Of a stretch of DNA of 64,000 bases, positions 19,352 through 63,991 are shown piece by piece. The notes below the pieces were generated by a model that saw only the letters and a list, made by a program, of their open reading frames with translations, made no database searches and was not told where the DNA came from. Where the stretch lies: contig NC_086380.1 of the NCBI RefSeq assembly GCF_036588685.1, forward strand, positions 5,704,001-5,768,000, written 5' to 3'. The position numbers and the translations under genes are program-made. This DNA is from Mytilus trossulus (taxonomy: Eukaryota). Within the stretch, counting starts at the first letter, position 1. Each line of letters starts with the position of its first letter.

Positions 19352-37109
<17,758 letters not shown>

Positions 37110-39656: not shown

Positions 39657-42600
39657 ATGGCTATAGTATTCACGTTAATAGTTTCATCTGTCATATTGTT
39701 TTCTATATATTACCTGGCTACTAAATTTTCAGAATGGTTTTTGTGGACATCAAAAAGAAACAAAATGATAGAAAGTTTTCCAGGAAGACCGGCTCATTTG
39801 ATTTGGGGAAATCTCAAAGAAGTATGTATGTGCCTTATTAAGCAACTAAAAACTTTTTTAGTATCCGTTACAAGCTTGATTTTTCCAATCAGTTACCTAT
39901 TTGCATTAATTTATACTTACCCCAAGCATTTTTCAGTTTTTACATTTAATATGGGAAGAGGGGCGGAAGACATTTTTTAGACATGTATGTATGTACGTAG
40001 ATCCCTCCGTTTACGGTGCACCCCTCCAGATCTGCGAGGGTACAGTGGAATCCGTGTACACTCCCTATCGGGATTAATGGAGATGTGTCACTAACGTATT
40101 TACAATGTTCAATATTTACAAGGACAATCCCCACCCAACACCAGGGAGTGTTAGGACACAGGGTAGAGTCTGTTTTTATGGTGGAGGAAGCCGAAGTACT
40201 CGGAGAGAACCACCAGGCTGCTCGATACAGATATCAGCAGATTGATCTCCAGGTCAAAGTCGGGAGCAACTTTGATCAACCGAGGCCCCCATAGTACCCT
40301 TCTGATGTACTGATATTTTTAGCATCCCGAGTGAGAATCGAACTTGGGACCTTCAGCACTGTAGCAATCGGTCTTAACCACTAGACCACGAACTCACACA
40401 TGGTAATTGAACCGTTCAATTTGCCTAAACTCAGAAATAGCTGCTTTAATTGCCAAAATTCAGGATTTAATTATATTGTGATTTGGAAACAGTCACATTA
40501 TTTCTGGGGGAAGTCGCAATCAGGAACATCATTTCAGCGTGAAACAGGGATTTCATTTTATAGCAATGGATATTTGTCACTCCATTAATTACCTCTCAAA
40601 GCAAAAATTACCTACAAAACTACAAAATTGTATATCAGTACAATCTTCAGAGAAAGTGTAACAGAATTGTATCATCATTACAATATTTTTTAACATTTTA
40701 TTATATATTTCAGAGTTGTCTTATAATATTATGTAGTCGATATTTATTCTTGGTCCCTTCTTTTCTCTGGTACAATGAAACAAAAGTGAAATTTGGAACA
40801 GCATGAACAGTATTGAAACTTATAATATTGTGACGACATTTTTTTTTTACATGTCTATCTATGATCATGCATGGCAATTTTAATAGCATCCACTTTAAAT
40901 TTTACAGTAATACAGGATTTGGCATATATAGGCTTTGTAATTTGGGATGTGGCACCTGTTTACATCTCTCTAGAAAGGATAATTTGTAACCTAGCTATAT
41001 CTTGCTTTATCATCATACATGTATATATATGATTATATATATACAAATGTAGTTTTATTACCCTAATGGCCTTATATTTTAATGAAATCTGAAAGTACAT
41101 GTATTCTTGTGTTGGAAATGATGATTACTATTTTTTTTTAAGTAAATGTAAATACCCTGCAATAACAATAGTTTGGTAAGTTATACCCTATGTCATGTAT
41201 GTTTACAATGGTAAAAGAATGATGTTTGACAATTGATCTTTAACGATCAATAAGAATAAACAACAACCATGACAACCATATTTAAAGCACTTTTCTGTGT
41301 TTACAAAATTATTCATTCGGTACCAGTAATAAAAATGAAAATTACAAAAGAGGGTTTTGCAAAAAAAATATTATTTGAAAGGAGAGGATTGAAACTGAAG
41401 TTAAAGAAACAATTGCCTAAAATGAAATTTATATAAGATGCTGATTTATATACATGTCAGAATAGATTGATGTCAGGTAAGCAGGTAAGGATACAATCAA
41501 ATATCTGTCTTTGACTTTCTAAATCAACAATTTACAGAAATTTAAACTTACACCAATTTGTGATCCCTCCATTTATCCATTTGCAGTTAAATTTGATGGT
41601 TGACAAACCAACATTAAAGGTACATGTACTAAAATGTATACCCTGAAAAAAACTTAAATTCTAATATTGGAAGACCGCTCAGGATAACAGATGAACATGC
41701 ATTGTCTTTGTGTTTCCATGTGAGATCCATGGCCTAGTCAGACCTGACGTGAAAAATCTAAGTAATTTTTTTTCTAATTCAGTGACAGTCCAAATTTTTA
41801 GTTTATAGTTAATTGTCGCATATGCAAGGGAATGCATACATGATGGTTATGTAAAACGGTATTTAACTTTGCCTTACAAACATTTAGTGTATATATATAC
41901 TGTGGATTCATTAATTTTCGTTGGATACCAATTTTCATGGATTTCGTGGTTACAGGTGAACCACGAAATTAAATGTTCCACGAATGAGAAATTTACTATA
42001 AGCTTGTATGTAGACTGTATCAAAACCACGAAATTAAATATCCACAAACATGCAAGTTTTCCCTAATCCACAAAAATTGGTACCCACGAAAATAAATGAA
42101 TCCACAGTATTCTATTTAGCTTAAATTTAAATATTTTAGTATCCAGGTCCAAACGAGGCAGGTTTACAATGGGCTCGAGAATGGGTGACAGAATTTCCAT
42201 TGGCATCTAGATTTTGGCTTGGACCTTTTATTCCACTCATCTGTATATATCATCCTGATACAACTAAATTAGTTCTAAAATCCTCAGGTAAATATTTCTA
42301 AATTTACTATTTATTTATAGTTCCCAGGTATTAATGATGAAGGACTCAAGTTCCAGAGAGAAGAGACTGGATTATTTCCCAAAGTGTCTCGTGGTTGGTT
42401 AGGACCCTTTTTGCCAATGTTATTTGTCTACCATCCAGAAACTACCAAAATTGTCTTGAAATCATCAGGTATGTTTCAATCCTTCCAGTGAATAAATTCC
42501 AAGTGTCTGTCCAATTTTGCATCCTTTCCCCCCCTGTCTACCCTTTATACCATTACTTTTAGAACCTTATCTATTGTGTTAATTATAAATTACAAAAAGA

Positions 42601-45600
42601 CAACCACATCCATAACATATACCACTGTTCACTTCCTTTATTTATTGTGTTTATTGATCATTTGCTCTTACTTACAATGACTTATATATGCATGTAATAT
42701 TTGCCACTGGACAAACAATCATTAAATAATGCTACTCATGAAATATACTAAAAACACACATCAGTAAAAGATATGGTAAATGTTTGGCCCTCCAATAAAA
42801 ATAGATTTCCCAATTGCAGTTAGTGATGCATGCATAAAACAAAAAATATATGAAGGTTAAATGACAAGGTGACAGCAAGCATGCAATCAAAGATGTATGC
42901 TTATGTTTGTTAAATAAAGCAATTAACAATAATACCATACGTTTTTTTAAGTTCTAAATTAATAAACACAATTTACTCTTAATCCTTTATATTACTACGA
43001 TAGTAAGTTTTTTTTTGTCATATATGTTTACAGAGCCAAAGTCCCATAATGCATACAGACTGATAGAGCCATGGATTGGGACCGGATTATTAGTTGCTAA
43101 TGGAGGCAAATGGAAGAGGAATCGTCGTCTGCTAACTCCAGCTTTCCATTTTGAAGTTCTAAAAAATTACCAATTGATAATGAACAAGACATCAGATATA
43201 TTGCTGGTATTTGTCAAATTAGATTTAAATATTTTGATCAGATATTTGTTATTGATGAAATATGTGCAGATAAAAATCAAGCACTATATCAACAAAATTC
43301 AGTAAAAAAGAGCTAAAGAAATTATGGGAGTACAATTTTGGCTAATAATGTCAAATTACATGTAGATAATAAGTTATATTCTTAATATTCGAGAACTGAA
43401 AATCTGGCAAAGTCTTAATATGGAAACTTCAAACAATGTATAACAAGAATCAAATTCTGAAACTATTTTAACTCTGTTTTCCTAGAAATATAAGCTATTC
43501 ATTAGTAATTGACATCATATAGAAACTGCTATATAAATATGTGACTGGATATCATCTCTTGTCATGTGTGTTATACAAAGGAAAAAAGAAACTCAAATAT
43601 AGGCAATACACAGTTTAGACGAATTAAAAGTTGCAACACAATTTAATGGACATATCATTGGCACTCATACCACATCTTCCTATACCTATAAAAAAGATGT
43701 ATATGAACAGTAAACACAAATGTCTTAAGCTTTAATCAATACAAACATACCAATTGGGGAGGGATAGATATCATGTTCTCTGGAACTTAACCATAAGTTG
43801 GTTTTTAGCTCACCTGACCTGAAAGGTCAAGTGAGCTTTTCTCATCACTTGGCGTCCGTCGTCCGTCGTCCTGCGTCCGTCGTCCCGCGTCCGTCGTCCG
43901 TAAACTTTTACAAAAATCTTCTCCTCTGAAACTACTGGGCCAAATTTAACCAAACTTGGCCACAATCATCCTTGGGGTATCTAGTTTAAAAAATGTGTCC
44001 GGTGACCTGGTCATCTAACCAAGATGGCCGCCATGGCTAAAAATAGAACATAGGGGTAAAATACAGTTTTTGGCTTAGAACTCAAAAACTAAAGCATTTA
44101 GAGCAATTTGTCAAAGGGTAAAATTGTTGTTCAGGTCAAGAACTATCTGCCCTGAAATTTACAGATGAATATGACAACTTGTTGTTGGGTTGCTGCCCTG
44201 AATTGGTTATTTTAAGGAAATTTTGCAATTTTTAGTTATTATCTTGAATACTATTATAGATAGAGATAAACTGTAAACAGCAATAATGTTCAGCAAAGAA
44301 AGACCTACAAATAAGTCAACATGACCGAAATTGTCAGTTAACCCCTTAAGGAGTTATTGCCCTTTATAGTCAATTTTTAACCACTTTTCGTCATTTTTTG
44401 TAACTTGTACAAAAATCTTCTCCTCTGAAACTACTGGGCCAAATTAAACCAAACTTGGTTACAATCAATCTTGGGGTATCTTGTTTAAAAAATGTGTCCG
44501 ATGACCACGCCTTCCAAACAAAATGGCCGACATGGCTAAAATTAGAACATGGTGGTAAAATGCAGTTTTTTATTTATATATTTGAAACTAAGACATTTAG
44601 GGTAAATCTTACAAGATGTAAATGTCCATCAGAAAAAGATCTATTCCCTCACAAATTTTCAGATGAATCTGACAACTCGTTGTTGGGTTGCTGCCCTAAA
44701 ATTGGTACTTTTAAGGAAATTTTGCAGTTTTTTGTTATTATCTTGAATACTATTATAAATAGAGATAAACTGTAAACAGCAATAATGTTCAGCAAAATAA
44801 GATCTACAAATAAGTCAGCATGATCAAAATTGTTAGAGGACCCCTTAAGGAGTTATTGCCCTTTATAGTCAATATTGAACAACTTGTAAATACAGTAACA
44901 GGTGAGCGACACAGGCTCTTGAGAGCCTCTAGTTTTATTTACTGATAATGACTTTTATATTTCAGACCAAACTTGAGAATTATGCGGAGACTGGTGAGAT
45001 ATTTGAGGTGTTTTCTAACATCAGTTTATTTACATTAGATACCATGCTACAGTCAGCTTTTGCTTATGAAATTGATTGTCAAACCACAGGGTAAGATATA
45101 CCAGGGAAATTTTATTGTGTTGCTCTGTCATTTCGGGGCCTTTATTATAGCGGACTATACAGTAAGTGCTTTGATTATTGTTGATAAGATAAGAGTATGG
45201 GTATTTCTCATTATTAAAGGCCATGTGGTAACCTATAGTTGTTAGTTTCTGTATCATTTGGTCTCTTGTGGAAAGTTGTCTCATTGGTAATCGTACCACC
45301 TCATCTTTTTTTATCATGTTTATCATAGCTGTTGTCTGTTTAGAGGCGAATCAAATTTATATCAACAGAATATGTTACCATGATTTATGTTTGATGTTGG
45401 CTCAATATCTAAGCATAATTGAGATAGCATTACTGAGTATATGATGAATTTTGAATTTGTGAATTTTTAAGAAATTATTTGTGCCAGCTTTAAATTTATT
45501 AAAGATTTTATTATGGATAACATTATTTTTGAAAAATTCATGCCCTGTTGTAATGAGCAGTAAAATTGAAACTATGTTTCAGTGTTAAAATATAAAATAA

Positions 45601-48600
45601 ACTGAATTAAGTTTGTTAATCTATAAATCAAGATTAAATAGAAGGGGGAGGTTAAAATCTTATAAGTTTGTTTTTTTATAAAAATTTTATAGCTTGTCTC
45701 AAGTTAGAAAGTACATCTGTAGTTGTTTTACTTCCTACTGTGGATCTATTATTATTGGTGTGAGACCAATTTCTCTAGATTTTGTTGTTGTAGGTAAACC
45801 ACAAATTCAGATGTTCAAGAATTTACAAATATTCTATTTTGGTACCCAGACTCAACCATGAAATCAACTATCCAAGAAAATGCAAGATTTCCTCATTCAG
45901 AAAACATTGATACCCGCAAAAATAAAAGAATCAATAGTATTTGAAAGATTTTTGTTAATTGGAGAACTGAGTTTTGATGATAAATCATTGAATGTTTCTG
46001 TTAAATTAATTCACAACTTTTATCAGCCATAATTTTACTGTTATAACTTTTACTATTACAATGAAGTTGTCTTTACACTTGTTACATTCCAGGGAAAACG
46101 ATCCTTATGTTGTAGCTGTTCATGAACTTGTAGAACTAGTAACAGAAAGATTTTTGTAAGTACTTGTAGAATATTTCTTGCTTCTCACAATATTATTTAC
46201 CATCCGTTACAGGCTTTACCTTTGTGCATTTCTTTCAATATATTTTATATCCAATGAAACAACAAAAGTGCTGCTGATACTATATACTATTAATTCAGAT
46301 ATAATAGAAATATTAAAAACAAAATTGACAAAATTGTGAAATAAGTTATTGAGCTTTCAGCAAAAGTGGCATTCATATTTTTGTATAAGATATCAAAATG
46401 CGATACTAGTAACATTAAGTTGCATTATTAGTATATATAAATACCTCACAATAATTTCTGAATTTACAGACACAGTACCTGGTACCTCATTCTTACTTAT
46501 GGTAATTTTTTGTTATATATCATTTTATTCTGGTATCACCTAAGTTGGACAAAGGTATACAGAAAAACGCATTAGTTTACATTACATTACATATAAGTAC
46601 ATTTGTTGAGGAAGCATTAAATAATATTATGAGGTTTTTTTTTACAACGGTATGATCAGTATAGTCGACAGGTTAACATCAGAGAGAATCCAGTTTGTCA
46701 TATATAATTCTGATAAATTTGCACAATTTTTGGAGTTTAGATTTCTGTTTTTGGTTCATAATAGCATTAAATTTTATAACATTGCAGTTCGTTAGGTATT
46801 TATTGTCAATTAGTAGTGTTCTATCTGCCAGGAGACTGCTGCATTCCATTACATAGTGGTATTCATCACCTATAGCAGCTCTGCATAACTGACACTTTCT
46901 CTGTTCACGGGGAATGTTTTGCCATCTGCCATTTTCAATCGGCAGTTTATGGTTCATGGTCCTAAACCGCGACATTGTTATCACATCTTTATCGTCAAGT
47001 ACATTAAGGTAGTGTTCGAAATTTTGTAATGTCTTGAATAGGCAATAATTCAGGGCTTTCAGCGAATCGTTTACCTTTCCTGTCCATAACTGTGTAAACT
47101 GATCTTATAGTCTTTGTTTAATTGTCGATTTAATGTTAGGTGGTGTATTTTGGAATGACCATAAGTAAGAAACTCCACAATTGTCTAGAATACTTTTCAT
47201 CTTGTCTAATGATCGCGATCGAAATGTTGTTTCTTGTGATAACTTCAAAAGGTATCTAAACATGACAGCAGCGAGCTTACTTTCTTTACCGGTAATTAAC
47301 TTTGTCCAATAAGATATAATTCTAATGTTTATATCTATTTCTAGGGGATACCGACCCAATTCTCCGTAAATGAATTCGTTTTGAGTAGATGGCTTAAGAT
47401 GTAAAAGTAGCTTAAAAAATTTAGTTTGAACTCTTTCTAGTATATCTATGTTTTCGTAACCCCATATTTCGCATCCATATAGCAGAATAGGTTTTACCAG
47501 TATGTCAAATAAATCTACGTGGCATTTAATTGATAAATTGTGAATTCTTCCCTTCCTTAAAACTTCGTACATTGCACTTATAGCTTTGTCCTTTAAATTT
47601 TGTTTGCATTGTTTAAAGCTGCCTGTTTTGCTGAAAATAATTCCTAGGTAGTTAAAGTGTTTTACAGTTTCAATATGATGATTGTTGAATCGGAAAAGTG
47701 GAGGGTTTGTCGTTCTTCCTTTTGAAAAAATTAAGATTTTAGTTTTAGCAACATTTACTCGCATCTTCCAGGTTTCGCAATACTTTTTAAATTTGTTAAG
47801 TGCATGTTGTAGTTGTTCAGGTGATTCTGCCAGGATTACAGTGTCATCCGCGTAGAGAATTATGAATAATTTCATTAAAGTTCCAAGTTTTTCTTCTATA
47901 TCTTTACTTATTGTCTTCATGCCTAAAACATTTTCTGAGATGAGATAGTCTTCTAGGTCATTCAAGTATAAAGCAAATAAAAACGGTGACAGATTTTCTC
48001 CTTGTCTGACACCGATTTCACAAGCGAACGGCTCACAAATTTGACCATTATAGCTCAAGCTGGATTTAATATTCTGGTACATGCTGAAAATAGTATTAAA
48101 CATTTTCCCCTTTATATTGCTGTTCAACATTTTAAACCATAGGAAATTACGATTAACCGTATCGAAGGCCTTTTCAAAGTCTACAAATGCGCAAAATAGT
48201 TTCTTTTTTGAGTGTTGTAAAACTTCAATTAGAGAGTTCAGAAGAAACGCGCAATCAATTGTTGAGTATTTTTCTCAGAAACCATTTTGATTTTCTTTAA
48301 GAAGAGATGTTTGTTCTGAGAATTTTTTAAGGCGTTCATTTAATACCGCTGTAAAGACTTTTCCGAAACAGCTCACAATAGTTATTGGTCTGTAATTTTT
48401 GGGGTTGCGTTTGTCACCTTTGTTCTTGTAGACAGGTTTTATCATTCCTTGGACCCATTGTTTTGGGATTTTTCCGGAGTTGAAAACTAGGTTGAAAATT
48501 TTCACATATATGTCTATAAGAACATGAGCTGATGTTTTTAAATATTCATTAATCAGTTTGTCTTCGGCGCATGCTTTGTTATTTTTCAGATTTTTCAGCG

Positions 48601-51600
48601 CTTTAAGAATTTCATGTTTTGTAATTCTGCTATTTAACTCATCGTTTATTTCTTCATGGGAAATATTACTTTCAATTTGTTGATTTTCTGTATCATCTCT
48701 CAGATCACTGTTTAATTCTTTGAAATATGAGACTAATTTGTCGAAATCGATCTTGGGCTGAGCTGTACTTTTGTTTCCATTTAGAAGTTGCCAAAATTCC
48801 TTACCATCCTTTTGCTTTAAATCATCCATTTTCTTTCTGAAATCGCTTTTGTATTTCTTATGTGCTTTGTTCATTGTATTTTTATATCTCTTCTCGGCAT
48901 CTAACACAAGTGCTCTGTGGAACGGTGACTTATTTTTATTTCGTTTCATCTTACGGAATTCTGACCTAGCGGTTTTGCAGTCATGGTCAAACCATGGTTT
49001 ATTTTTTCTATGTTCTGACTTCTTTCCTGCACTGATTTTAAACCCAAAAGTGTTTCTTGCTGAATTTATTAACACTTTGCCTATTTTACCTATTATCGTA
49101 TCTACTGTTTCTTGCGTCACTACTGTCGTGCCATCAATTTCAGAATTAATATTTTCTATTTCTGTAAGGTTCAAGCATTCTAAGAATTTGTGTGATTTTT
49201 CATTAGTCCAATTATTTATTTTTTGTTCATTTGTTCTAGTATCATCGCTATATTTGGTGCTAACTTCTTGATCTGTTTGTTTCAGCGATATCTCGATTGG
49301 GGAATGAACATCTGAATAGAGACTTGAAAAATCAAGTACTTTAAAATCAGTAAAATTTTGAATAAGTTCTGCGCTGCATAGGCAATAATCAACAACGCTT
49401 GAATTTCGGCATGTGAACTTTCCATCTATCTCACCTAGAGTTCTACCATTCATGATGAAGAAGTTATTTCCCTTGCAAAATTCTAGTAGTTGATTTCCAA
49501 ACCTGTTCTTGATTTTATCTCTACTGTTCCTTTTGCGAGAGAAGTCATACTGGTCTAAATTGCAAACAGCATTTATTTGTATATTTTCGATATCTACGAC
49601 ATGAGACTCACTGTCGGGAACAAATATAAAATCATCCTCTGACCCGGTTCTTGCGTTAAAATCACCAACAAGTAAACATTTTGAAAACCTATGTGATAGT
49701 TCGAATAATTCCATCTCAATTTCGTTTATTGCATCAATGGATGAATATGAAGTATATTCAGGGGGGATGTAAATAATTCCCAAAAGAATATCATCTGATC
49801 TATTTATTACTTTCGTTATTTTACACCACAAAACAAATTTACTTTCAGTTTTGATATATTCAATATTATCTTTGAGATGGTTTTTGTACGCTACAGCTAA
49901 ACCCCCCGACCTTCTTTTGCCAATTTTATTTCTGTTTTTATAAATCAATTCATATCCCTGTAATTGTATATCATCGATATCGTCTAGTTTTGTTTCTACA
50001 ATGCCAGCAATGTCCGTTTTATGCAGCAGTTCCGTAAATTCAGGATATTTGAGTTTTGATTTAATTCCACAACAATTAATACAAGTAAGATTTAGATAAT
50101 TTAACTGATCATTCTGATTTTTCGAGGACTCCCTCCTACAGTTGCGTGGTTAATGTTGCCTCCTTAATGGCGTCATTGTTTCCAGATTCCTGTCGGGACC
50201 TTTTAAAAGGGCGTTCATTTACAGTTTTGTTTCTATGCAAATTTTGTTGGGCTTGACGTAGTAGAACATCCCTATATTCAGTGCTGTTTGGTTTTGTGTC
50301 GGTTGATACATGCCGTTTCCCATTGATATATAATTTATCTCTTACCAGTTTTACTTTTTTACCCTCATTCTTGGCCATCTTCATTACAGGGTAGAGTTCT
50401 TTCCGTTTTCTTTCAATTTCGATCAGGAATTGATCGCTTATCCCAAATGTTTTCCCTTTCAGCTTGAATGTATTTTTAAGTACATCTTCAAGCTCATCTC
50501 TGTGGATAAATTTGGCTACAATAGGACGGGCTCCGTTCAGTCCGGGTTTTCCAAATCGATGAACGCTACCCAGATTTACGTTATAGGGTATGTCCAGTTC
50601 GTTTAATAAAAAGTTCTGAATTTTCAATTTGCACGATTCTTCCCGCTGAAACGCTAACCCGGCGAATACTAAGTTATCGCTCATGCTTCTGCATTTTAAG
50701 TCTAACACTTCCGCTTTTAATTCCTGAATGACTATGTTTGAGACTTTTCCGTTTTCCTCCCCTATCGTCTCCATTCTGTCTTTTATTTGAGATATCTCTT
50801 CAGCATTTGCTGAATATTTGTCTACTACAGTATGAACGATCTGACCCATTTTTTCAACACTTTCTTCAACTTTCCTATTTCGGTCTTGGATCTCGACAAT
50901 TGTTTCCTCATTTGTCTGTACTCTTGTAGACAAATTTGACAGGCCTTCCTTTATACCATCGATTTTCTGTACTTCTATCTCTATTTTCTCGATCCTATCC
51001 GTTAGGACTCGTAGCGACTTCAGGATCTCCATAAGGATAACTCTAGCATCTTTGTCATATAAGAGGTTTCCCGATAATTCATCGTCGGTTTGTTGGGTAT
51101 TTGTAGCCATTTTGACGTTGCTTTGGTTATCCGATTGTTATCAATTGTTCCGACGTATAGTGACGTTATGACTATAGATACAAATTCCTTCTTGTTTTGC
51201 ATAAGTTTTGAAGAAAACGGTTTTAAGAGAAAAGGACCAAATATCATATAAAGATTGGAGTTAATATCAAGCGAAATCTTCTTACCGTTTTTATATCGTA
51301 TATTTAAGTTGTTCGGCTGGTTATAGTCAATATTGTAGCGATTTTGCTCAAGAGCAAATTTTGCGTGCTGCTTCCTCAACAACGTCAAAGTCAAAGTGAT
51401 AAATGATATACAGTTTAGCTTAGATGACACTTAATTTATTTTCTATCAATCTTGTTGCAGGAAACCATGGCTTCACAATGACCTTATATATCTGTTGACC
51501 TCAGATGGTAGAAAGTTTAAGAAACATTGTGACTTTGTACATAAAGTGGCAGAAGATATAATATCAAAAAGGAGAAAAACTATAGTATGTGTTTTATTCC

Positions 51601-54600
51601 TATAAACTGCAAGTATGTCTTTAAACATGGTTTATTACTAGAATAAATTTACAAAAAACAATTTTGTTTTTGAAAGTAAATCTTATGTTTCTGACATTAT
51701 TGACAGAAAAATGAATAACTACACTTTGGTCAATGTGGGTATTCTAATCTGAAATCTTATAAGGGATCCAAATCCTGAGGAATAATAGACAACTTGCAAG
51801 TTTGATGCATTTCCGTCAAAAACTCTGGTTTAAGTGAACGTCATTTGTGCGTTTAGGGGTGTCGTTAAGATTTGTCAAAGTTTAGGTAAACAATAACAAA
51901 CAAATGAATATATGATAGTAATGACATAATTACTGAAAAATCAGAAATGATTGCATGCATTTATAATTGGGATTTTTGAAAAATGGACATAAATGCAAAA
52001 TTAATTATTGTATAAACTATCAGAATGTGAATTCTTATTATAGTGATATTCACCCAGTTGCATTATTCATATTGATAAAAACCTCACAATAATTATTGAA
52101 TTAAGGTGGTACCCAACACTTAAAATTAATTTAAGTCGTATAATTTTCTTAAAATTTTGACAACGTATTAACTTTGACTCTTTGACAAAAATTAGAAAAT
52201 AAAATTAAAATTTGAACCAACCGCTTTATCAGAAAAATTACACCGGTTATGTAGCAGTTTGACAAAAACTTATTTTGACTTGAACAGCTTTATTTTCCAT
52301 AAACAACACAACATAATTAAAACGTTTAGCTGATTTTACAGAGTTATCTTCCTGTACTGTTAGGTACCACATTAATACATGTAGTATTTTTTTTACAGAA
52401 AAAAGAGGCTAAAGGTTATTCACAGAAGAAGAACTTGGACTTTTTGGACATCCTTTTATCAGCTAGAGATGATAATAATCAAGGATTGACAGATTTAGAA
52501 ATCAGAAATGAAGCTGATACATTCCTGTTTGAAGGTATTATATCATATTTTCAAATTTAAGGTTAAGATTCAAAAACATAGAAGTATCTAGTCATTTTAT
52601 GCTTAAAGTCATTTTTATTCAATTTAATCAGTTAAATCTTTGCTTCCTAGGTTTAACTAATTGATTTATTGATTTTTTACCAATCAACAGAGAAAAATGT
52701 GAAAGTTAAATTTACTTGTCAAACTCATATTTAAGGGAAGTAAATTGTGCCAACAAAAAGTTTGCATCATGCTATTCTCTCCTGAGTAGATAGTATAATT
52801 TCAAAAAGTAAAGCAGATTTCATTTTTTTTTAAATTGATTGCACCAATTTGAGAAATACCTTGTCCCATTTGATTCTATTTATATCTTTAAACAGCATGT
52901 ATCATTCTTTTAAACAGGGCATGACACAACAGCCAGTGCTCTGTCATGGGCCTTATATTCCCTAGCAGAACATCCAGAGATACAGAAGAAGTTACAGGCT
53001 GAAGTAGATGAGGTTCTAAAGGGAAGGGATTCAGATGAAATTCTATGGTTAGTTAAAATGGGTACTTTTAGCTGCTAATCATTGAAAATCAAAATGAAAC
53101 ATCAATTAGTTTGTGATTTGTTAAATGATAAGACATAAATAAATGTAAAATGTGTTAATGGCACAAATAATGCACCGCTTGCATATACTCATGCAACAGT
53201 AGAATTGAAGTAACCCAAATTTGCACTAAATATGAGTTTTATAGTGATCAGCATTGAATTTAAGTTACATAACATTTGGCTGAAGAAAACTAAAGTAAGA
53301 GAATGGAGAAAAAAGTTTGGACGGCAATAAGGGTTACAGATGTCCCTTCCTCGGCACAGTCCACATAGACAAATATCAAGAACTTAAATGCAGAATTGCT
53401 GATCTCACTACAATAGGTTGCATGTGGTGAACATAAAAGCTATCTCCTAGGAAGGTTAAGGTGAATTTTCCTTATTGGACCATACTTTGGATTCTTTTGA
53501 AATCTGTAAGCATTTATAACTTTTTGAATTTCATGATTTGGTTCTCCAACTTTGTACATACAATCTGATATTTGAAAACAAATTTATTAAACATACTTTA
53601 ACTAATTTTGAAAATCATTATGCATGGCAAATCTGACAAGTGCTTACATATTCACTACAAGTTTTGGATAATTTATCAATTTATTTTCAGGGAAGATCTA
53701 CCAAAGCTGCAATACACCACTATGTGTTTGAAAGAAGCCATGAGGTTACACACCCCTGTACCTTTTATCCAGAGAGAATTGACAGAACCGATGGAGTTAG
53801 ATGGACATGAGGCACCTGCAGGGACACAAATCAGTATTATGTTGTATAACTGTCATCATAATCCCCTCGTCTGGCCTAATTCTATGGTAGGTTTTGGATG
53901 GAGCTTGAAAATGTACAGTAGATTAAGGATAGTCCTTATGGAATTTGGGAAGTGATGACATATTATAGCTTACTTTATGGTATGAGTTTTTTTGTCATTG
54001 TAAAAGGCAGTACAGTGCCCTGAAGTTGTTTTACATCCTCGTCTTGTTTCATAAGTATTGAAAAAATCCTTTAGAGAAAAGGACCGAAAAAGTAGATTAA
54101 AGAATTGAGGACAATTTGATGTAGTTTGAAAATATATAAAACCATTGTAAGACATCTGATTTTACATTGACATGGTACAATCAGCAAAAGATACTAAAGG
54201 GATAATCAAACTCAAAAACAAACTGACAATGCCATGCAGAAGACAAAAATTCTCATGACTGTGTACAAAACAACATTAAAAACTAAATACTGATCAACAT
54301 AAATCCCACCAAACACCAGAGCTGACCTCATGTTCTCTGGTCTGGAAGGGTAAGCAGATGCTGTTCCAAAAGTAACACCTTTCATGTTGCTCATGTTAGT
54401 ACAAAGCCAATGATAAGTCATATTTGAAATATCACTTTTCAAGACAATTGTGGCATATCATTCATCTTCTGTGAAACAGATATTCCATCAAGGTGGATTA
54501 GAAAATGATGCATTCATTAAATTTAACATGTTAAAGCATGTATTTATTATAGTGTGTGATAACATTGTGTGAGGGAATTTGACGTTTGCTGCACCACTGT

Positions 54601-57600
54601 TCACTCCAGTGCAATTTATGACAATACCACTGCCTCAATCAGAGTTATTTGTTTTGCAGTGTTTTAAGAAATGATTTTGCTTTGTTGTCGCGTATTATTT
54701 GTGAAACATTCAATGTTTTAAAAAGGCGAATTGTCTGTATAAAGTCAATGATTATGTTGACTTTTGAAGGCCAAACTTTCTACAGCCTTAAATACGCTAA
54801 TGAAAGATTCAAAAACTATACCAATACATAACGACATGTTTATGAAATTATATTCGTTATTGCAAAATAATGAACTTAAAATATCTGACATTTTCTCCCT
54901 ACCCAGTTTACCCCTACACATTTTTATGATGTGGACTGGTCATTGTTATTGAATCGTAGGCAATGTGATTGGATTAAGTTGTTATTAGTTTACCTTCAAA
55001 CTTGTTTATGCTTTTCATACATGACTATTGATTAATTAGAACGTGCATGAATGTGTAAGGTAACTAAAATGACCTTCAGACTGGACACTGAACGAGTCAA
55101 TATTATGTTTTATCAATGAAAGTTAAGGTAGGAAAGGTAAGAATTGCCACTTATTCTATTTTCACAAAATTTTCGGAATATACAGTTGAAAGGTTATTTT
55201 TTAAAAGCCTATTGTGAAGATTAAAGAGAAAGTTTTCCATGAAACAAGTCATTTTCTTAAGAGAAATGCTGAAATACATTTTACGCACGACTACAGCAGG
55301 TAAAATTATTATTTATCATAATAAAAAAAAGCATTTTTCAGTCACATTGGAATATGTTGATTAATATAATCCCAAATTTAAGAAGTAAGTAAATAAAGTC
55401 AAAATGTGTCCGATCTGCCTATTTCTGCACATCAAAAGTCAATATGATCGTTTTAAAGTCAATTTCGTTATCTCTCAAAATCTTGTTAGGCACTATAGTC
55501 ATGATAGTTATATGCATTTATTTAAAAAAAATAATAATAATCGCATATAATGTTTGAGTTATCTCCCTTACAACATATGTGTGCAGTGTTATTCAATAGA
55601 CTAAGTTGCATCCCGCTATATTTATTAAAAAAAAAGTCCTTTTCATTTGTAACAGTTGTGAACCAAAGTGTAATTGAAAACAGTCCAAAATATAAATCAG
55701 TACATGTCCAAATAAAAAAGTTTTCTAAGTCACATTTGTGGCATTTGGCTGTTTCCTGCACTTTGGTGGTATCTTCCATCACAGCTCTTTGACACATTCT
55801 TCATTTTCATTCTCAATTTTAATCATATTGTAGTGGGTCGATAAAATGGACAGCAATAAAAAAATAATTGAATTTGTCAAGATATGTACATGTCTGTTGA
55901 CAACTATCACTCATTCTCACAAACTTCAGTTTATTTTATAATCTAGCAACTGTATAAGATATTTTACATTATTTTTCAGGACTATATACCAGAAAGATTT
56001 TCACCGGAGAATGTAGAGAAAAGAGATGCCTATGCTTTTATACCATTCTCAGCAGGTCCAAGGTAACATTTGTATATTTATTTTTAAAATTTACCAAAAA
56101 GGGGACTGTATTAGTTGCTTACCTTCAGAGATCAGTAGCATATCAACTTTAAGGGTTGTGAGCTAGAACCATGGATTCTTGATGTTGAGCTGGTTGATGT
56201 CTATGCTGTGTTGAAGCTTTGACATAGAGGGATCTATAAAAGAAAAGGATTTAAATGTTCAATCTACGGTAAAGTTGGAAGTTTTCATTACAGGGTTATG
56301 TTTGCTAGTTCTGTGATTAAGGTGGTACCCAACACTCACTAAAATTAATTTGGCTTGTTTAATTTTCATGAAATTTTGTTTAAGTATTTACTTTGACCCT
56401 TTTATAAAATATAAAAATTTCAAAAATTTTGAACCAACCGTTATGTCAAAAAAATTACACTGGTTATATATAGCAGTTTGGCAAACACCAAGTTTGATCA
56501 TTCAGAAGCTTAATATTCCTTTTACAACATAACGTAATTAAAGCGTTTAGCTGACTTTACAGAGTTATCTCCCTGTAGTGATAGATACCACCTTAAGGAA
56601 AAATAGCAAAATATCCCCTTGCATTCAAATGATCTCAAAGGAAGACCAGAAATTAAGGAATAGAAATGCATGATATCTAAACCCAACATACAGGTAAGGC
56701 CAAAGAGTTGACAGACCAAAGAAATCAGAAAACTTATAGATGCCATAAAACGAATTCAATTTATAGTATGAAGCATAATACTTTGGAAATACTGCATATA
56801 GAATAAATATAATAAGCTAAATTTGTATCTTTGTGGCACCTACCCTGTTAAAATGTTTTCACAATAGCTAAACAATTGCAGAATTTTTTAATTTTAAAAA
56901 GTTTGATCTTAAATGGATATACATCTCAAATTGCAAACACCTGCCACTGTATTTAGGATACATTAAAAATGATTTAGTTTCACATTATTATTTTAAACAA
57001 CATTAGGAATATGCATCCAGATGTTTGCACTCCCATGTTCAAGTGGTAATGGGTCATGGTAAAACATTGACATTTGTGTACTGACATTTTTAAGAGGGGG
57101 GATGGAGGGGTCCTGATCCCGAAATCCTGGACTTAAAACCATGAAATCCAGAGGTCTGGAATTTAAAAAAACATAAATCCTGACATCCCAAAATTTGAAA
57201 AAAGAAATCCCGGATCCCGATTACTGATCCTGTCATTAATATTTATATATAAGCGATTGACGATCTTATTAAATTTCAACAATGTCATGTGATTGTCATG
57301 AGATTGCTGTCTCATTGATATTTGTATGCCCTACATCTGATTTTCTTCTTGTTAGCGGTATACATGTATGCTCTTTCATGACTTTTGTCTGGTTGTTGTC
57401 TCTGGAACACATTTCCCATGTGTAATGCTCCCACATATTTACATTGTTTAGAATAGCATGAATTATAGGTTTTTTTCTGTCAAAAACATCCACAATATCA
57501 TAATAAAAATAATATTTATATACAAGCAATAGGTTACCAATGCAATTAAAGATAAGAGATATACTTTACCACTAGATACATACTGAAGATACTTTTAACA

Positions 57601-60600: not shown

Positions 60601-63600
60601 TTATTTTGTAGTAACAAACCATGTTTTACATTGCAGAGTTTCCCTAAAAGATTTATAAAACTTTTTAATTACTGAAAATTTCTTTTGTTTTCATGGTATT
60701 GTAATTATATAGGAGCAAACTTCCTAAACGAAGCCAGGCGGCTCCATCTTGGGCTGTGGGTAACTTAAGTTACCCACGGCCGTTTAAGCACAGTGAATGG
60801 TGAAGTATTTCAGGGTTTATTTCATCAATTGTTGGATAATGATAAATTGTAGAAAATATTGCTTAAGGCAGCGACCATTTGATTTTCTGGGGGGGCTATG
60901 GTTTTTTTTCTGTGCAAACTTCTTTTTTCGCCTTCGGAAGAACAATCACTTTTATTAGCGACAAACCGAAAACAACTTTTTTCTTTTAATTTTAGCATTA
61001 CATAAAGTGGCAGCTGAGGGTGAAACAAACAATTTTATTTTCTCAGGGTCCAAAACAATTTTTTTTTTTCACCAAAACCTGGAAACATACCATAGACCCC
61101 CCCCCCCCCCCCCCCCCTCAGAAAATCAAATGGTTGCTGCCTAAGGAAGATCAGAGTTAGCAAATATTTTGTATACCACTTTAAATATTTAGTTGCACAT
61201 TTCTCCAACTCTACTGCACATAATGATTTATTATATGTCAGAAGATCAACAGTGAAGAGTTTGTGGAGATTTTCAGATTTGTCTAATACTTACTCTAGGT
61301 TTTCAAATGAGGGTCTGCTAAGCATAGCAATGCATTCAATCTTGATATACCAGTAAAGGAACACAATTCCATGCTTTAGAATCTAATGCATCCTGGGTAA
61401 TATTTTCAAAAGTGTACACCATAGCATCGTGATTGGTTAAAAATGTCATAAACAATGGCAAATCAACCTATGACGTTACGTTATTTTCATTTTGGGGTAC
61501 GAAAATGAAATTACCCATGATTCTTTAGATTCTGAAAAGGCGAATTCCTGTTTCATTTTAAACAAATGATTATTGATTGATGTTTTTCTTGGTATTTTTC
61601 AGGAACTGTATTGGACAACAGTTTGCTCTACATGAAATGAAAACAGTTCTTGCCAAAATATTTAGAAGGTTAGTCCTCAATATAATTTATTCAACATTTT
61701 TAAAAGATACCTTGCAAAAACAAATAAATACCCAGATCCCTAAAAAAACTATTCAAATACATTGATAAAGACACATGCAATTTTGAAGTCTGTGTTGCAT
61801 GTCATTAACCACTAGTATAAACATGTTTAACCCTGCCACATTTTTGCACCTGTCCCAAGTCAGGAGCCTCTGGCCTTTGTTAGTCTTGTATTTTTTTAAT
61901 TTTAGTTTCTTGTGTACAATTTGGAAATTAGTATGGCGTTCATTATCACTGAACTAGTATATATTTAGGGGCCAGCTGAAGGACGCCTCCGCATGCAGAA
62001 ATTTCTTGCTACATTGAAGACCTGTTGGTGACCTTCTGCTGTTGTTTTTTCTATGGTCGGGTTGTTGTCTCTTTGACAGATTCCTCATTTCCATTTTCCA
62101 TTTTATTTGTTAATTTATGTATCATTGTCGTTATGCTTAGTTTCTTTTGTTACCTATTCTCACATCTGACTCATACTTTTTATAAACTGAATATAACTGT
62201 GCATATTGTTGTGTGTTGAACTGTTTGTTTATTCTACATTGGCTAGAGGAGTAGGGGGAGGGTTGTGATCTCTGACACCAAACATGTTTAAAAAGTAAAA
62301 TCAGAAAAATACTGAACTTAGAGGAAAATCAATTCCGAAAGTCCATAATCACATGGCAAAATCAAATAATAAAACACATCAAAAACAAATGGACAAGAAC
62401 TGTCATATTCCTGACTTGGTATAGGCATTTTCAAATGTAGAAAATGGTGGATTAAACCTGGTTTTATAGCGCTAACCCTATCACTTTGATGACAGTCTCA
62501 TCAAATCCCCCCCCCCTGCATTTTAGTGCCTGACTTAGACATCTGGTCTTTGTAAGCCTTGGTTGTTTTTAAATTTTAGTTCATTAATATGTTTTGGAGT
62601 TTGGTGTGATGTCCATTTTCATTAAACTAGTATACACATTGTTAAGGGGTCAGCTGAAGCACGCATTTGAGTGCAGGATGTTCTCGCTGTGTTGAAGGCC
62701 CATTGGTGGCCTTGTACTGTTTTCTGCTCATGGTCAGGTTGTTGTCTCTTTGAAGCATTCCTTATTTCCATTCTCAATTTTAATCTTGTTGAAATTATAA
62801 TGTCTTTCTTATATGTACAGGAGGAAAATAAATCTTATGATTATGACATCTTTCGGAAAAATATCAGGTGTCTAACTAAATGCACTAATAAACCTTGCCA
62901 AATAACTGAGAAAAAATGTGTTAAAAAAGGTGTTTACAAATTTATAGAACATTACATTGAATTCTTATGGTTAAATCTGATGATATCTGGACATAAATCA
63001 AGCACATTTTTTATAATTTATAAGGTAATAAAGTAGAAATATATGATATACAGATGTTCAAACTTGTAAAATCCTGCCCCTTTAATTGTAAAATACTAAG
63101 TTGTTTGCAGATAGGAACGATTTGTAAGTGATAAAATTGTAACTATGTGCTTCAAATTAAAAATGAGTACCGCTATTGCTTAACCGATTATTAATTTAAG
63201 AAATATTTAACTACTGATGGGAGATAATTTGAATAAATAGATCGTAAAGAATGACATACAGCAACGTTATCTTGGAATGATCGTGATAAATGTTTGATTA
63301 TCTCCCCTTTACACATTACAAGTACCAACAACTTATATTTATCGTCATGTGCTGGCCTGTGAGAAGTGTCCACTTATTGTAATGTTCATATTAACGTGCC
63401 TCCAAAACTTAACCATACTATAACACTAATTTCAAGATGCATCTTAACATTGTACCCGACCACCTTATACCATTGTGGTATCTTGCTGCTTTATCTTGAA
63501 AAATATGAAAATATACTCCATAATTGCTTATGAATATAAATAAATTGTTATTTTTTTGAAGAATGTTTAATGTTATTGACTGGAATCATTGGTAACATTG

Positions 63601-63991
63601 TTTTATGTTGAAAAATACCAAAGATACTCCATAATTAATTATGATTAAAAATTAATTGAAATTTATTTGAAGAATTTTTATGATATTTTAATACAGAAGT
63701 CATTGGTCAGACTTATGCAAATAAAATAGTTTCAACTTAAGAGAGATTTCTTTCTTTCCTCGACTAAAATTGTTCTTTCAAAGATCTCAACATTGCAAAA
63801 ATTACTGCCTTACATCCTGGCCTGATATATCTGAATTACTGTATATCATTTTTGTGGTATTGAAGAAGAAATCTATGTTTTATATTTGCAGATACTCATT
63901 AGAATTAGACCCTACCCACAAGGTGGAGAAATATGAAACATTGGTTATGAGATCACAGACTGGTATAAAGATGAAGGCATATAGAAGATAA
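39657..63991 (+). CDS. CYP4: Cytochrome P450, family 4 (CYP4F-like), 502 aa, with alternative exon 2A/2B
   Basis: Exons 39657-39821, [42140-42287 OR 42321-42468], 43034-43206, 44966-45090, 46093-46155, 51461-51584, 52399-52534, 52918-53047, 53691-53886, 55980-56062, 61603-61668, 63892-63991 (1509 nt). Motifs: N-terminal TM anchor, [17 protein letters not shown]4 I-helix [18 protein letters not shown] (ExxR), PERF and heme motif FSAGPRNCIG. Subfamily cannot be fixed without a tree. Confidence 0.95.
39983..40395 (-). mobile_element. tRNA-derived SINE
   Basis: Minus strand: A box TGGTCTAGTGG, B box GTTCGATTC, conserved-core-like GGTGGTTCTCTCCGAGTACTTCGGCTTCCTCCACC, (TACA)n tail. More degraded relatives at about 14915-15110, 32516-32705 and 57830-58070. 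Confidence 0.8.
41900..42107. mobile_element. MITE with TA TSD and CTGTGGATTC TIRs
   Basis: ta|ctgtggattcattaattttcg ... cgaaaataaatgaatccacag|ta. Related or partial copies at about 45737-45938, 28168-28715, 14377, 25355-25403 and the split copy at 3261-5400. Confidence 0.9.
42140..42287 (+). CDS. CYP4 alternative exon 2A ([49 protein letters not shown])
   Basis: ttttag acceptor, 148 nt open frame, phase 0 in and phase 1 out, CAG|gtaaat donor. Confidence 0.92.
42321..42468 (+). CDS. CYP4 alternative exon 2B ([49 protein letters not shown])
   Basis: tttatag acceptor, 148 nt open frame, phase 0 in and phase 1 out, CAG|gtatgt donor. Paralogous to exon 2A. Confidence 0.92.
43802..44934 (+). mobile_element. 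HINE/pearl(CvA)-like element
   Basis: 5' TTTTTAGCTCACCTG with subterminal inverted CAGGTGAGC (about 44899-44907). CGTC-rich microsatellite. Two ~499-bp internal repeats starting at about 43909 and 44408. 3' hairpin AGGCTCTTGAGAGCCT, then TT. Confidence 0.88.
46679..50163 (-). pseudogene. LINE ORF2 (AP endonuclease, reverse transcriptase, C-terminal CCHC) with two in-frame nonsense codons
   Basis: One reading frame throughout. APE motifs [34 protein letters not shown] motifs [42 protein letters not shown] motif CQLC...H...C. Stops TGA at 48275-48277 and TAA at 47105-47107; no frameshifts. Confidence 0.92.
50136..51110 (-). CDS. LINE ORF1 (coiled coil plus L1-ORF1-type RRM/CTD), 324 aa, intact
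   Basis: Heptad-rich N-terminal half, then the SDNLVFAGL...HRFGK...RPIVAKF...GISDQF...DKLYING pattern typical of L1-like ORF1 proteins. Confidence 0.85.
   Translation of the reverse strand: MATNTQQTDDELSGNLLYDKDARVILMEILKSLRVLTDRIEKIEIEVQKIDGIKEGLSNLSTRVQTNEETIVEIQDRNRKVEESVEKMGQIVHTVVDKYSANAEEISQIKDRMETIGEENGKVSNIVIQELKAEVLDLKCRSMSDNLVFAGLAFQREESCKLKIQNFLLNELDIPYNVNLGSVHRFGKPGLNGARPIVAKFIHRDELEDVLKNTFKLKGKTFGISDQFLIEIERKRKELYPVMKMAKNEGKKVKLVRDKLYINGKRHVSTDTKPNSTEYRDVLLRQAQQNLHRNKTVNERPFKRSRQESGNNDAIKEATLTTQL
52105..52371. mobile_element. Copy of the TTAA/GGTGGTACC MITE
   Basis: ttaa|ggtggtacccaacac ... tgttaggtaccaca|ttaa. Opposite orientation to the 30440 copy. Confidence 0.85.
56321..56592. 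mobile_element. Copy of the TTAA/GGTGGTACC MITE
   Basis: ttaa|ggtggtacccaacac ... gataccacc|ttaa. Confidence 0.85.
59500..60795. mobile_element. Non-autonomous DNA transposon with 52-bp perfect TIRs (CACTGTG termini) and apparent 6-bp TSD AATGGT
   Basis: TIRs at 59500-59551 and 60744-60795. aatggt at 59494-59499 and 60796-60801. Subterminal GTCCGTAACTT / AAGTTACGGAC repeats. No transposase ORF. Confidence 0.9.
60867..61141. mobile_element. MITE with GGCAGC/AACCATTTGATTTTCTG TIRs and G/C runs
   Basis: ggcagcgaccatttgattttctggggggg ... ccccctcagaaaatcaaatggttgctgcc. Confidence 0.85.
61365..61547. mobile_element. Small MITE-like repeat (second copy at about 19581-19763)
   Basis: Imperfect inverted ends agaatctaatgcatcctgggtaat / attacccatgattctttagattct. 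Collinear with the copy in the last LZTR1 intron. Confidence 0.65.

What the first reader, a model, noticed from the sequence alone, without database searches (positions are those of the whole stretch)
42140..42468. Mutually exclusive duplicated exon in an invertebrate CYP4: one gene, two substrate-channel variants (CYP4F3A/B-like switch)
Seen in sequence: two tandem 148-nt exons with identical phase (0/1) and intact splice sites, separated by only 33 nt (42288-42320). They share 28 of 49 residues, and 15 of those 28 codons differ synonymously, which points to an old duplication with both copies kept under selection. Including both exons shifts the frame (148 mod 3 = 1). Retaining the spacer hits TAA (GGT AAA TAT TTC TAA). 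A 33-nt intron is also probably too short to splice, so the exons should be mutually exclusive. Established knowledge: human CYP4F3 uses mutually exclusive, equal-length exons for the equivalent N-terminal region to make CYP4F3A and CYP4F3B, which differ in substrate preference and tissue distribution. Inference: this mollusc-like gene makes two enzymes differing at residues 56-104 (A helix/beta1, substrate entry region), by convergence or deep homology. Gene predictors would normally report only one.
Basis: partly seen in the sequence, partly recalled or inferred. Interest (0 to 1): 0.88.

Follow-up and report, generated by a model that had tools for sequence, protein, structure and literature searches.

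The report
Mussel CYP4 gene's alternative exon pair
A mussel (Mytilus trossulus) cytochrome P450 family 4 gene carries two back-to-back copies of one exon and uses one or the other to make two enzymes with different substrate-channel mouths; this is real, but public annotation already records it and it is common among related invertebrate genes.

Summary
Two 148-nt exons (42140-42287 and 42321-42468) with AG/GT sites lie 33 nt apart. They share 28 of 49 residues, and 15 of those conserved residues use different codons.

They are alternative coding exon 2 of an intact 12-exon CYP4 gene. The genome is Mytilus trossulus. RefSeq already lists both products: XP_063448740.1 carries 2B and XP_063448741.1 carries 2A, and they differ only at residues 56-99. 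Matching isoform pairs are annotated in M. galloprovincialis, M. edulis and M. californianus, so the claim that predictors report only one is wrong here.

Including both exons or neither gives an early stop. The 33-nt spacer is probably too short to splice out.

The swapped segment encodes helix A, strands beta1-1 and beta1-2, and helix B.

The same exon is duplicated in a second mussel CYP4 gene. It is alternatively spliced in clams, abalones, a whelk and Lingula, and is triplicated in a mis-joined Capitella gene model. Trees indicate separate lineage-specific duplications, not shared ancestry with human CYP4F3.

An earlier scan note on another CYP4 gene in this genome (duplicated K-helix exon) was partly confirmed.

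Verdict: real, ordinary, and already in the databases.

The parts
39657..39821 (+). Coding exon 1 (residues 1-55: membrane anchor and proline hinge), phase-0 donor GTATGT
   Evidence: 100% match to residues 1-55 of XP_063448740.1 (P0233)
41897..42110 (.). MITE-like element with 39-nt inverted ends; it ends 29 nt upstream of the exon 2A acceptor. It is a neighbour of the exon cluster, not shown to act on splicing
   Evidence: Inverted repeat I1; hairpin -77 kcal/mol, z -8.5; at least 4461 candidate copies in the genome, scored copies 89-96% identical
42140..42287 (+). Alternative exon 2A (148 nt, 49 codons plus 1 base); used in isoform X2 (XP_063448741.1)
   Evidence: its translation is contained exactly in P0230
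42288..42320 (+). 33-nt spacer with GT..AG ends between the two alternative exons. It is probably too short to be excised and reads into TAA if retained
   Evidence: the smallest true intron of the gene is 383 nt; thresholds from PMC4165533 and PMC5740500
42321..42468 (+). Alternative exon 2B (148 nt); used in isoform X1 (XP_063448740.1). An internal AG at 42326-42327 is the site that some ab initio models used to join 2A and 2B in frame
   Evidence: its translation is contained exactly in P0233; mis-joined M. coruscus model P0236
43034..43206 (+). Coding exon 3 (residues 105-162: B-C region), phase-1 acceptor
   Evidence: Pfam p450 E = 2.2e-7
44966..45090 (+). Coding exon 4
   Evidence: Exact match to P0233 residues 163-204, GT-AG
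46093..46155 (+). Coding exon 5
51461..51584 (+). Coding exon 6. The preceding 5.3-kb intron holds an antisense retrotransposon
   Evidence: RVT_1 E = 5.8e-20 at 47108-48130 on the minus strand
52399..52534 (+). Coding exon 7 (start of the I helix)
52918..53047 (+). Coding exon 8 (I-helix EGHDTT motif continues)
53691..53886 (+). Coding exon 9 (K helix, ExxR, beta1-4). It is single here, but it is the exon swapped in scallop orthologues
55980..56062 (+). Coding exon 10 (start of the heme-binding loop)
61603..61668 (+). Coding exon 11 (heme-ligand cysteine motif, L helix)
63892..63991 (+). Coding exon 12 with stop codon TAA

Best explanation
The two units are a tandemly duplicated coding exon 2 of one intact Mytilus trossulus CYP4 gene (RefSeq name 'ultra-long-chain fatty acid omega-hydroxylase-like'). 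They are spliced in a mutually exclusive way.

Shown:
- The exons are homologous, equal in length and phase, and have intact splice sites.
- Public annotation of this gene lists exactly two 502-residue proteins that differ only in this segment.
- The segment forms helix A, beta1-1, beta1-2 and helix B of a CYP4B1-like fold.
- Both copies are conserved across five Mytilus species.

Inferred:
- Exclusivity is enforced in two ways. The 33-nt spacer is too short for a spliceosome to remove (steric interference). Because 148 is not a multiple of 3, transcripts with both exons or with neither hit a stop within 5-10 codons and would be lost or useless.
- The two isoforms probably differ in substrate entry or membrane-proximal channel properties. 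Of the 21 differing residues, 9 fall in helix A and 5 in beta1-2, while the WLGPF turn and most of helix B are unchanged.
- The duplication arose in the mussel lineage. It happened after the split from scallops and before the Mytilus species diverged.
- It is independent of the vertebrate CYP4F3 pair.
For: - Sequence anatomy.
- Gene model: all 12 coding exons match XP_063448740.1 exactly and have GT-AG borders.
- Species: contig C12 is 60,198,110 bases, the same length as the contig of M. trossulus XP_063410748.
- Annotated isoforms: P0233 contains 2B exactly and P0230 contains 2A exactly. X1/X2 pairs in M. trossulus, M. galloprovincialis, M. edulis and M. californianus differ only between residues 56 and 99. 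Independent annotations of M. galloprovincialis, M. coruscus and M. edulis also carry both forms.
- Transcript evidence for 2B: a 502-residue ORF with a 2B-type exon sits on a contig of at most 3.1 kb, while the gene spans 24 kb, so that contig is spliced RNA.
- Selection: 2A vs 2B gives dN 0.42, dS above 1.5 (saturated) and dN/dS 0.13-0.29. Between Mytilus species there are 0-4 residue changes per exon and no stops or frameshifts.
- Frame consequences.
- Spacer size: 33 nt against a smallest true intron of 383 nt in this gene.
- Literature on steric interference and NMD in mutually exclusive exon clusters: PMC4165533 and PMC5740500.
- Structure: pLDDT 92.9; helix 61-73, strands 77-82 and 86-91, helix 94-101. 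Best structural matches are CYP4B1 entries 6C93/5T6Q, TM 0.89-0.93, with sequence E = 4e-115.
- Parallel case in the same genome: the C12 paralogue has two intact 148-nt exon-2 copies, and its X1/X2 isoforms are annotated in two sister species.
Against: - Junction usage, relative abundance and the absence of 2A-2B joins therefore rest on database annotation.
- No transcript-derived protein carrying 2A was seen directly. A search with 2A alone found nothing in its length range.
- 2A changes slightly faster between Mytilus species than the rest of the protein: 3-4 changes per 49 residues against 1-2 expected. This could mean weaker constraint.
- The minimum spliceable intron length in Mytilus is not known to me.
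- The paralogue keeps its pair with a 373-nt intron, so a short spacer is not required for such a pair to persist.
Confidence: 0.85

Rival explanations
1. One copy, most likely 2A, is a little-used or decaying duplicate. Its annotated isoform would then be a by-product of homology-guided prediction, and the gene would effectively make one enzyme.
For: - 2A accumulates somewhat more residue changes between Mytilus species than 2B or the rest of the protein.
- No transcript-derived protein with 2A was recovered.
- A young MITE sits 29 nt from the 2A acceptor in this genome.
- In the C12 paralogue, M. trossulus is annotated with only one of its two copies.
Against: - 2A is intact, with good splice sites.
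- It is 92-100% conserved in five Mytilus species without stops or frameshifts.
- dS between the copies is saturated while dN/dS is 0.13-0.29.
- Four separate annotation efforts include a 2A isoform.
- 2A keeps the family-wide N-terminal and turn motifs, and it is 63% identical to a limpet CYP4 exon.
Confidence: 0.08
2. Both exons are included together, using the AG inside 2B (42326-42327) and a 40-nt intron. This would give an in-frame protein with a duplicated helix A/beta1 segment, as in the 513-residue M. coruscus and 201-residue Capitella models.
For: The join is in frame (sequence). Such models exist in GenBank: P0236, P0253 and P0001.
Against: - A 40-nt intron is still far below any true intron of the gene.
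- RefSeq lists no such form in four species.
- A P450 fold has one helix A/beta1 unit, so a tandem copy would probably not fold.
- These models come from pipelines that also list the single-exon forms.
Confidence: 0.02
3. The pair is anciently homologous to the vertebrate CYP4F3 exon 3/4 pair: one duplication in a bilaterian ancestor, retained in both lineages.
For: The same exon position and boundaries are involved in mussels, the brachiopod, the annelid and primates.
Against: - Vertebrate units form their own clade, separated from all invertebrate units (99/97 support).
- The Lingula units form one clade (97/91), and the C12 pair forms one clade (97/91).
- A single clade holding 2A and 2B is not rejected (p-AU 0.47).
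- Scallop orthologues of this gene have a single exon 2 in all annotated isoforms.
- PMC4494069 dates the human pair to Catarrhini.
- Caveat: only 49 columns were available, so the deep branches are unresolved.
Confidence: 0.03

Closest known systems
Human CYP4F3 exons 3 and 4 (CYP4F3B / CYP4F3A)
   Same: Mutually exclusive, homologous exons at the same position of a CYP4 gene, at the start of the P450 domain (helix A to helix B). One gene gives two enzymes (PMC9658179; PMC4494069; unit alignment).
   Different: The duplications are independent. The mussel pair is 33 nt apart. For the mussel, no tissue, promoter or substrate data exist. That CYP4F3A and CYP4F3B differ in substrate preference is taken from the literature cited in PMC9658179 and was not tested here.
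Short-intron (steric interference) mutually exclusive exon clusters, e.g. C. elegans let-2 exons 9/10 (30 nt) and egl-15 5B/5A (14 nt)
   Same: The intervening intron is below the spliceable minimum, so the two exons cannot be joined. Clusters whose exon length is not a multiple of 3 also rely on nonsense-mediated decay (PMC4165533; PMC5740500).
   Different: For the mussel, non-excision of the 33-nt spacer is inferred and was not observed. The species' minimum intron size is unknown here.
Second M. trossulus CYP4 gene on contig C12 ('cytochrome P450 4F6-like')
   Same: Two intact 148-nt exon-2 copies in tandem, with 34/49 residues identical and dN/dS about 0.12. X1/X2 isoforms that differ only there are annotated in M. 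galloprovincialis and M. californianus.
   Different: It has a 373-nt intron between the copies, so there is no steric lock. Its copies group with each other, which indicates a separate duplication. M. trossulus is annotated with the downstream copy only.
Exon-2 clusters in other lophotrochozoan CYP4 genes: Lingula anatina X1-X5; Mercenaria X1-X3; Ruditapes, Babylonia and Haliotis X1/X2
   Same: RefSeq isoforms of equal or near-equal length differ only in the exon-2 segment.
   Different: Most belong to other CYP4 subclades and some have three or four variants. Their genomic DNA was not examined here.

Membership tests
Cytochrome P450, family 4 (clan 4) | P450 domain (Pfam PF00067) | tested here: met
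   Exon 3 alone scores E = 2.2e-7, above the gathering cut-off. The 90%-identity cluster that holds this gene's proteins has a representative, P0127, that carries PF00067.
Cytochrome P450, family 4 (clan 4) | Heme-ligand cysteine motif (F-x-x-G-x-R-x-C-x-G) and ExxR in the K helix | tested here: met
   FSAGPRNCIGQ spans exons 10/11, and EAMR lies in exon 9.
Cytochrome P450, family 4 (clan 4) | I-helix EGHDTT motif, whose glutamate makes the covalent heme link in CYP4 enzymes | tested here: met
   FLFEGHDTTA is present at the exon 7/8 border and aligns to the same motif of CYP4B1. The covalent link itself cannot be tested with these tools.
Cytochrome P450, family 4 (clan 4) | Closest solved relative is a CYP4 enzyme at about 40% identity or more | tested here: met
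   Rabbit CYP4B1 5T6Q: E = 4e-115. Foldseek: TM 0.88-0.93 at 40-41% identity. This is borderline for the 40% naming rule.
Mutually exclusive (tandem duplicated) exon cluster | Adjacent homologous exons with the same length, phase and intact splice sites | tested here: met
Mutually exclusive (tandem duplicated) exon cluster | Mature products contain exactly one of the exons | tested here: inconclusive
   Met at the level of annotation: isoform pairs in four species differ only here, and no RefSeq form has both or neither. Reads could not be examined.
Mutually exclusive (tandem duplicated) exon cluster | Both copies are kept under purifying selection | tested here: met
   dN/dS is 0.13-0.29 with saturated dS. 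Each copy is 92-100% conserved among Mytilus species.
Steric-interference type of mutual exclusion | The intron between the exons is shorter than the minimum that can be spliced | tested here: inconclusive
   The spacer is 33 nt, against a smallest true intron of 383 nt in the gene. Published limits are about 40 nt in C. elegans and under 50 nt from donor to branch point in human. The limit for Mytilus was not measured.
Orthologue of the vertebrate CYP4F3 alternative exon pair (same ancestral event) | A- and B-type units group by type across phyla | tested here: not met
   Units group by lineage, and the vertebrate units are separate (99/97 support). The human pair is dated to Catarrhini (PMC4494069).
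CYP4F3-like functional switch | Isoforms differ in substrate preference and tissue distribution | not testable with these tools
   This needs expression data and enzyme assays.

The most novel reading that the evidence does not exclude
Coding exon 2 of CYP4 genes (helix A, beta1-1/beta1-2, helix B) may be a recurrent hot spot where tandem exon duplication followed by mutually exclusive splicing has arisen independently many times in Bilateria. Cases seen here:
- two genes in Mytilus;
- venerid clams (up to three variants);
- abalones and a whelk;
- Lingula (four variants);
- Capitella (three units);
- primate CYP4F.

Scallops and another Mytilus gene swap the K-helix exon instead. If this holds, CYP4 enzymes would be modular at the channel mouth, with splice-level diversification acting as an alternative to gene duplication. 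I found no paper describing this for invertebrate P450s in the library searched.
Probability: 0.55. Interest if true: 0.5.

Novelty: already known. Interest (0 to 1): 0.3.

Why it matters
- For this gene, the result means that expression and toxicology studies of mussel 'CYP4' should distinguish two isoforms. Primers or read counts that span residues 56-104 will otherwise mix them.
- Ab initio models that join both copies, such as the 513-residue M. coruscus entry and the Capitella entry, are wrong.
- More broadly, the same exon has been duplicated repeatedly across phyla. That makes CYP4 a useful natural experiment on how the substrate-channel mouth tunes fatty-acid or eicosanoid omega-hydroxylases.
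- The event itself is an ordinary tandem-exon substitution and is already captured by RefSeq.

Tried and rejected
- **RNA evidence:** No junction counts are available.
Genomic loci of the Capitella, Littorina and other hits could therefore not be fetched, and the exon pairs outside this genome rest on protein isoforms only.
- **The search for homologous proteins with exon 2A alone** found nothing. That search sees only proteins of 27-86 residues, so the blank says little.
- **The search for homologous proteins with the 2A segment of P0230** found only an M. edulis 2A form and one limpet protein. No 2A-type exon was shown outside Mytilus.
- **Competing RNA structures (docking/selector type):** the inverted repeats around the pair are either the MITE or short AT-rich matches. 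Nothing convincing was found.
- **A third, decayed exon-2 copy at 40502-40642:** E = 0.03 within 3.2 kb, and it contains a stop. I treat it as chance.
- **Deep homology with CYP4F3:** rejected.
- **Tree rows:** two spurious Mercenaria rows (positions 170/171) entered the second tree through a loose HMM threshold and should be ignored.
- **Spliced model:** Exons were searched by reference, and full-length comparisons used database proteins by their ids.
Full report
**1. The observation**

The sequence holds two 148-nt units on the + strand.
- 2A is 42140-42287. It is preceded by AG and followed by GTAAAT.
- 2B is 42321-42468. It is preceded by AG and followed by GTATGT.
- The spacer between them, 42288-42320, is 33 nt.

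The two translations are 49 residues each. They share 28 residues, and 15 of those use different codons. Nucleotide identity is 87/148, with the third codon position the most diverged: 20/49 sites identical, against 30 and 36 at positions 1 and 2.

In a six-frame search of the whole 1.3-Gb assembly, 2B finds 2A at E = 8.7e-13, so the similarity is not chance.

- Retaining the spacer reads into TAA after four codons.
- Joining 2A to 2B gives TAA at 42332-42334.
- Skipping both gives TGA at 43061-43063.

**2. What gene and what genome**

Exon 3 alone hits Pfam p450.

A profile of the two units was searched against 1.84 billion representative proteins and returned molluscan CYP4 proteins and fragments. 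One hit led to a full-length Littorina protein. A search with that protein reached a cluster of Mytilus proteins.

Two members of that cluster contain the window exons exactly:
- XP_063448740.1 (isoform X1) carries 2B.
- XP_063448741.1 (isoform X2) carries 2A.

Both are named 'ultra-long-chain fatty acid omega-hydroxylase-like' from Mytilus trossulus. Contig C12 of the window's assembly has the same length (60,198,110) as the contig of another M. trossulus RefSeq protein. The genome is therefore M. trossulus.

All 12 coding exons of X1 match the window exactly with GT-AG borders, from 39657 to the TAA at 63989-63991. True introns range from 383 to 5540 nt. The gene is intact: it has the EGHDTT I-helix motif, ExxR and the cysteine loop.

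I did not build or search a joined model. Exons were searched by reference, and full-length work used database proteins by id.

**3. Are the exons mutually exclusive?**

X1 and X2 are both 502 residues and differ at 21 positions, all between residues 56 and 99. The same holds for the X1/X2 pairs of M. galloprovincialis, M. edulis and M. californianus. Independent annotations of M. galloprovincialis, M. coruscus and M. edulis also list both forms.

A 502-residue ORF with a 2B-type exon lies on a contig of at most 3.1 kb, while the gene spans 24 kb. That contig must be spliced RNA.

Exclusivity is therefore shown at the level of annotation and reading frame, not at the level of junction counts.

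**4. How exclusion probably works (inference)**

The 33-nt spacer is more than ten times shorter than the shortest true intron of the gene. It is below the roughly 40 nt reported as the minimum in C. elegans. There, clusters with 14-nt and 30-nt intervening introns are never spliced together (PMC4165533). It is also below the 50-nt donor-to-branch-point criterion used for human clusters (PMC5740500).

Independently of this, 148 is not a multiple of 3. Double inclusion or double skipping therefore gives a premature stop. This is the situation in which nonsense-mediated decay backs up exclusivity in other species.

An AG inside 2B (42326-42327) would allow an in-frame 2A+2B join through a 40-nt intron. 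That is exactly what the 513-residue M. coruscus model and the Capitella model did. I regard these as prediction artefacts, because a P450 fold has a single helix A/beta1 unit.

**5. Selection and age**

Between 2A and 2B, dN is 0.42, dS is saturated (1.6-3.2) and dN/dS is 0.13-0.29.

Among four Mytilus species, 2A shows 0-4 residue changes and 2B shows 0-3. The rest of the protein would predict 0.5-1.9 changes per 49 residues. A fifth species, M. coruscus, also carries both units without a stop or frameshift. Both copies are constrained, with 2A slightly less so.

Scallop orthologues show a single exon 2 in all isoforms. A transcript-derived protein 77% identical to the mussel protein carries the derived 2B-type N-terminus. 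Parsimony therefore places the duplication after the mussel-scallop split and before the Mytilus species diverged.

An AU test does not reject 2A and 2B forming one clade (p = 0.47).

**6. Structure**

An AlphaFold model of X1 built with 93 homologues has pLDDT 92.9. Its best matches are CYP4B1 entries, with TM 0.88-0.93 and sequence E = 4e-115.

Residues 56-104 cover the loop after the proline hinge, helix A (61-73), beta1-1 (77-82), beta1-2 (86-91) and helix B (94-101).

Of the 21 differences, 9 fall in helix A and 5 in beta1-2. The WLGPF turn and most of helix B are unchanged.

From general knowledge of P450s, the beta1 sheet and helix A line the mouth of the substrate channel.

**7. Comparison with known cases**

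The human CYP4F3 pair (exons 3 and 4) is mutually exclusive (PMC9658179). It lies at the same place in the protein: a primate CYP4F read-through model has two units that align to the same profile.

The events are not the same duplication.
- In trees of the 49-residue unit, the vertebrate units are separated from all invertebrate units (99/97).
- The Lingula units form one clade (97/91), and the two copies of the second mussel gene form one clade (97/91).
- Abascal et al. date the human CYP4F2/CYP4F3 pair to Catarrhini (PMC4494069).
- Convergent origin of tandem-exon substitutions in orthologous genes is itself a described pattern (PMC9741552).

With only 49 columns the deep branches are unresolved, so the argument rests on lineage-wise grouping and on the single-exon scallop orthologues.

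**8. The event is not isolated**

In the same genome, the 'cytochrome P450 4F6-like' gene on C12 has two intact 148-nt exon-2 copies separated by 373 nt. They share 34/49 residues and have dN/dS of about 0.12. X1/X2 isoforms that differ only there are annotated in two sister species.

RefSeq isoforms that differ only in the exon-2 segment also exist in:
- Mercenaria (three variants);
- Ruditapes;
- Babylonia;
- three Haliotis species compared here (a fourth, H. cracherodii, is annotated the same way);
- Lingula (four variants).

A Capitella model strings three units together.

Scallop orthologues of the window gene instead swap exon 9, the K-helix exon. An earlier scan note on another CYP4 gene of this genome (s1-821030) describes a duplicated K-helix exon. 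I confirmed two tandem hits 67 nt apart at C8:19930265-19930709.

I found no paper describing these invertebrate P450 events in the library searched.

**9. Verdict**

However, the feature is already in public annotation for this very gene and species, it is one of many similar events in related genes, and it is convergent with CYP4F3 rather than homologous to it.

It is a sound and ordinary example of a known kind. The cross-phylum recurrence at the same exon is the only part that might merit a small comparative study.

Noticed in passing
window 41897-42110: MITE-like element with 39-nt inverted ends. It folds into a long hairpin (-77 kcal/mol, z -8.5) and has thousands of copies in the genome at 89-96% identity. 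It ends 29 nt upstream of the exon 2A acceptor, where the branch point should lie. Whether it affects the choice between 2A and 2B is unknown.
   Followed up: partly
window 47108-51110, minus strand (intron 5): Antisense non-LTR retrotransposon remnants inside the 5.3-kb intron. One ORF has a reverse transcriptase domain (RVT_1, E = 5.8e-20, 47108-48130). Two further long ORFs (48278-49948 and 50139-51110) have no Pfam hit.
   Followed up: partly
G000 C12:3197596-3198264, minus strand (L003, L004, L012): A second CYP4 gene has two intact 148-nt exon-2 copies separated by 373 nt. M. trossulus is annotated with the downstream copy only, while M. galloprovincialis and M. californianus have X1/X2 isoforms using either copy. 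The upstream-copy isoform is therefore probably missing from the M. trossulus annotation.
   Followed up: yes
G000 C8:19930265-19930453 and 19930521-19930709, minus strand: Two tandem K-helix (exon 9-like) units 67 nt apart in another CYP4 gene of the same chromosome, matching the earlier scan note s1-821030. Scallop orthologues of the window gene have X1/X2 isoforms that differ in exactly this exon.
   Followed up: partly
database proteins P0001 (Capitella ELU04871.1), P0236 (M. coruscus CAC5410444.1), P0253 (M. edulis CAG2232923.1): Gene models that string two or three alternative exon-2 units together in frame by using an AG just inside the next unit. They are probably annotation errors caused by the exon clusters.
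   Followed up: partly
window 40502-40642: Weak exon-2-like stretch in intron 1: 35% identity to 2B over 49 residues, one stop, E = 0.03 in a 3.2-kb search. It is most likely chance, but could be a decayed third copy.
   Followed up: partly
window 27705-28162: An earlier scan note (s1-823768) reports an amplified splice acceptor in an LZTR1 gene upstream in this window. I did not look at it.
   Followed up: no
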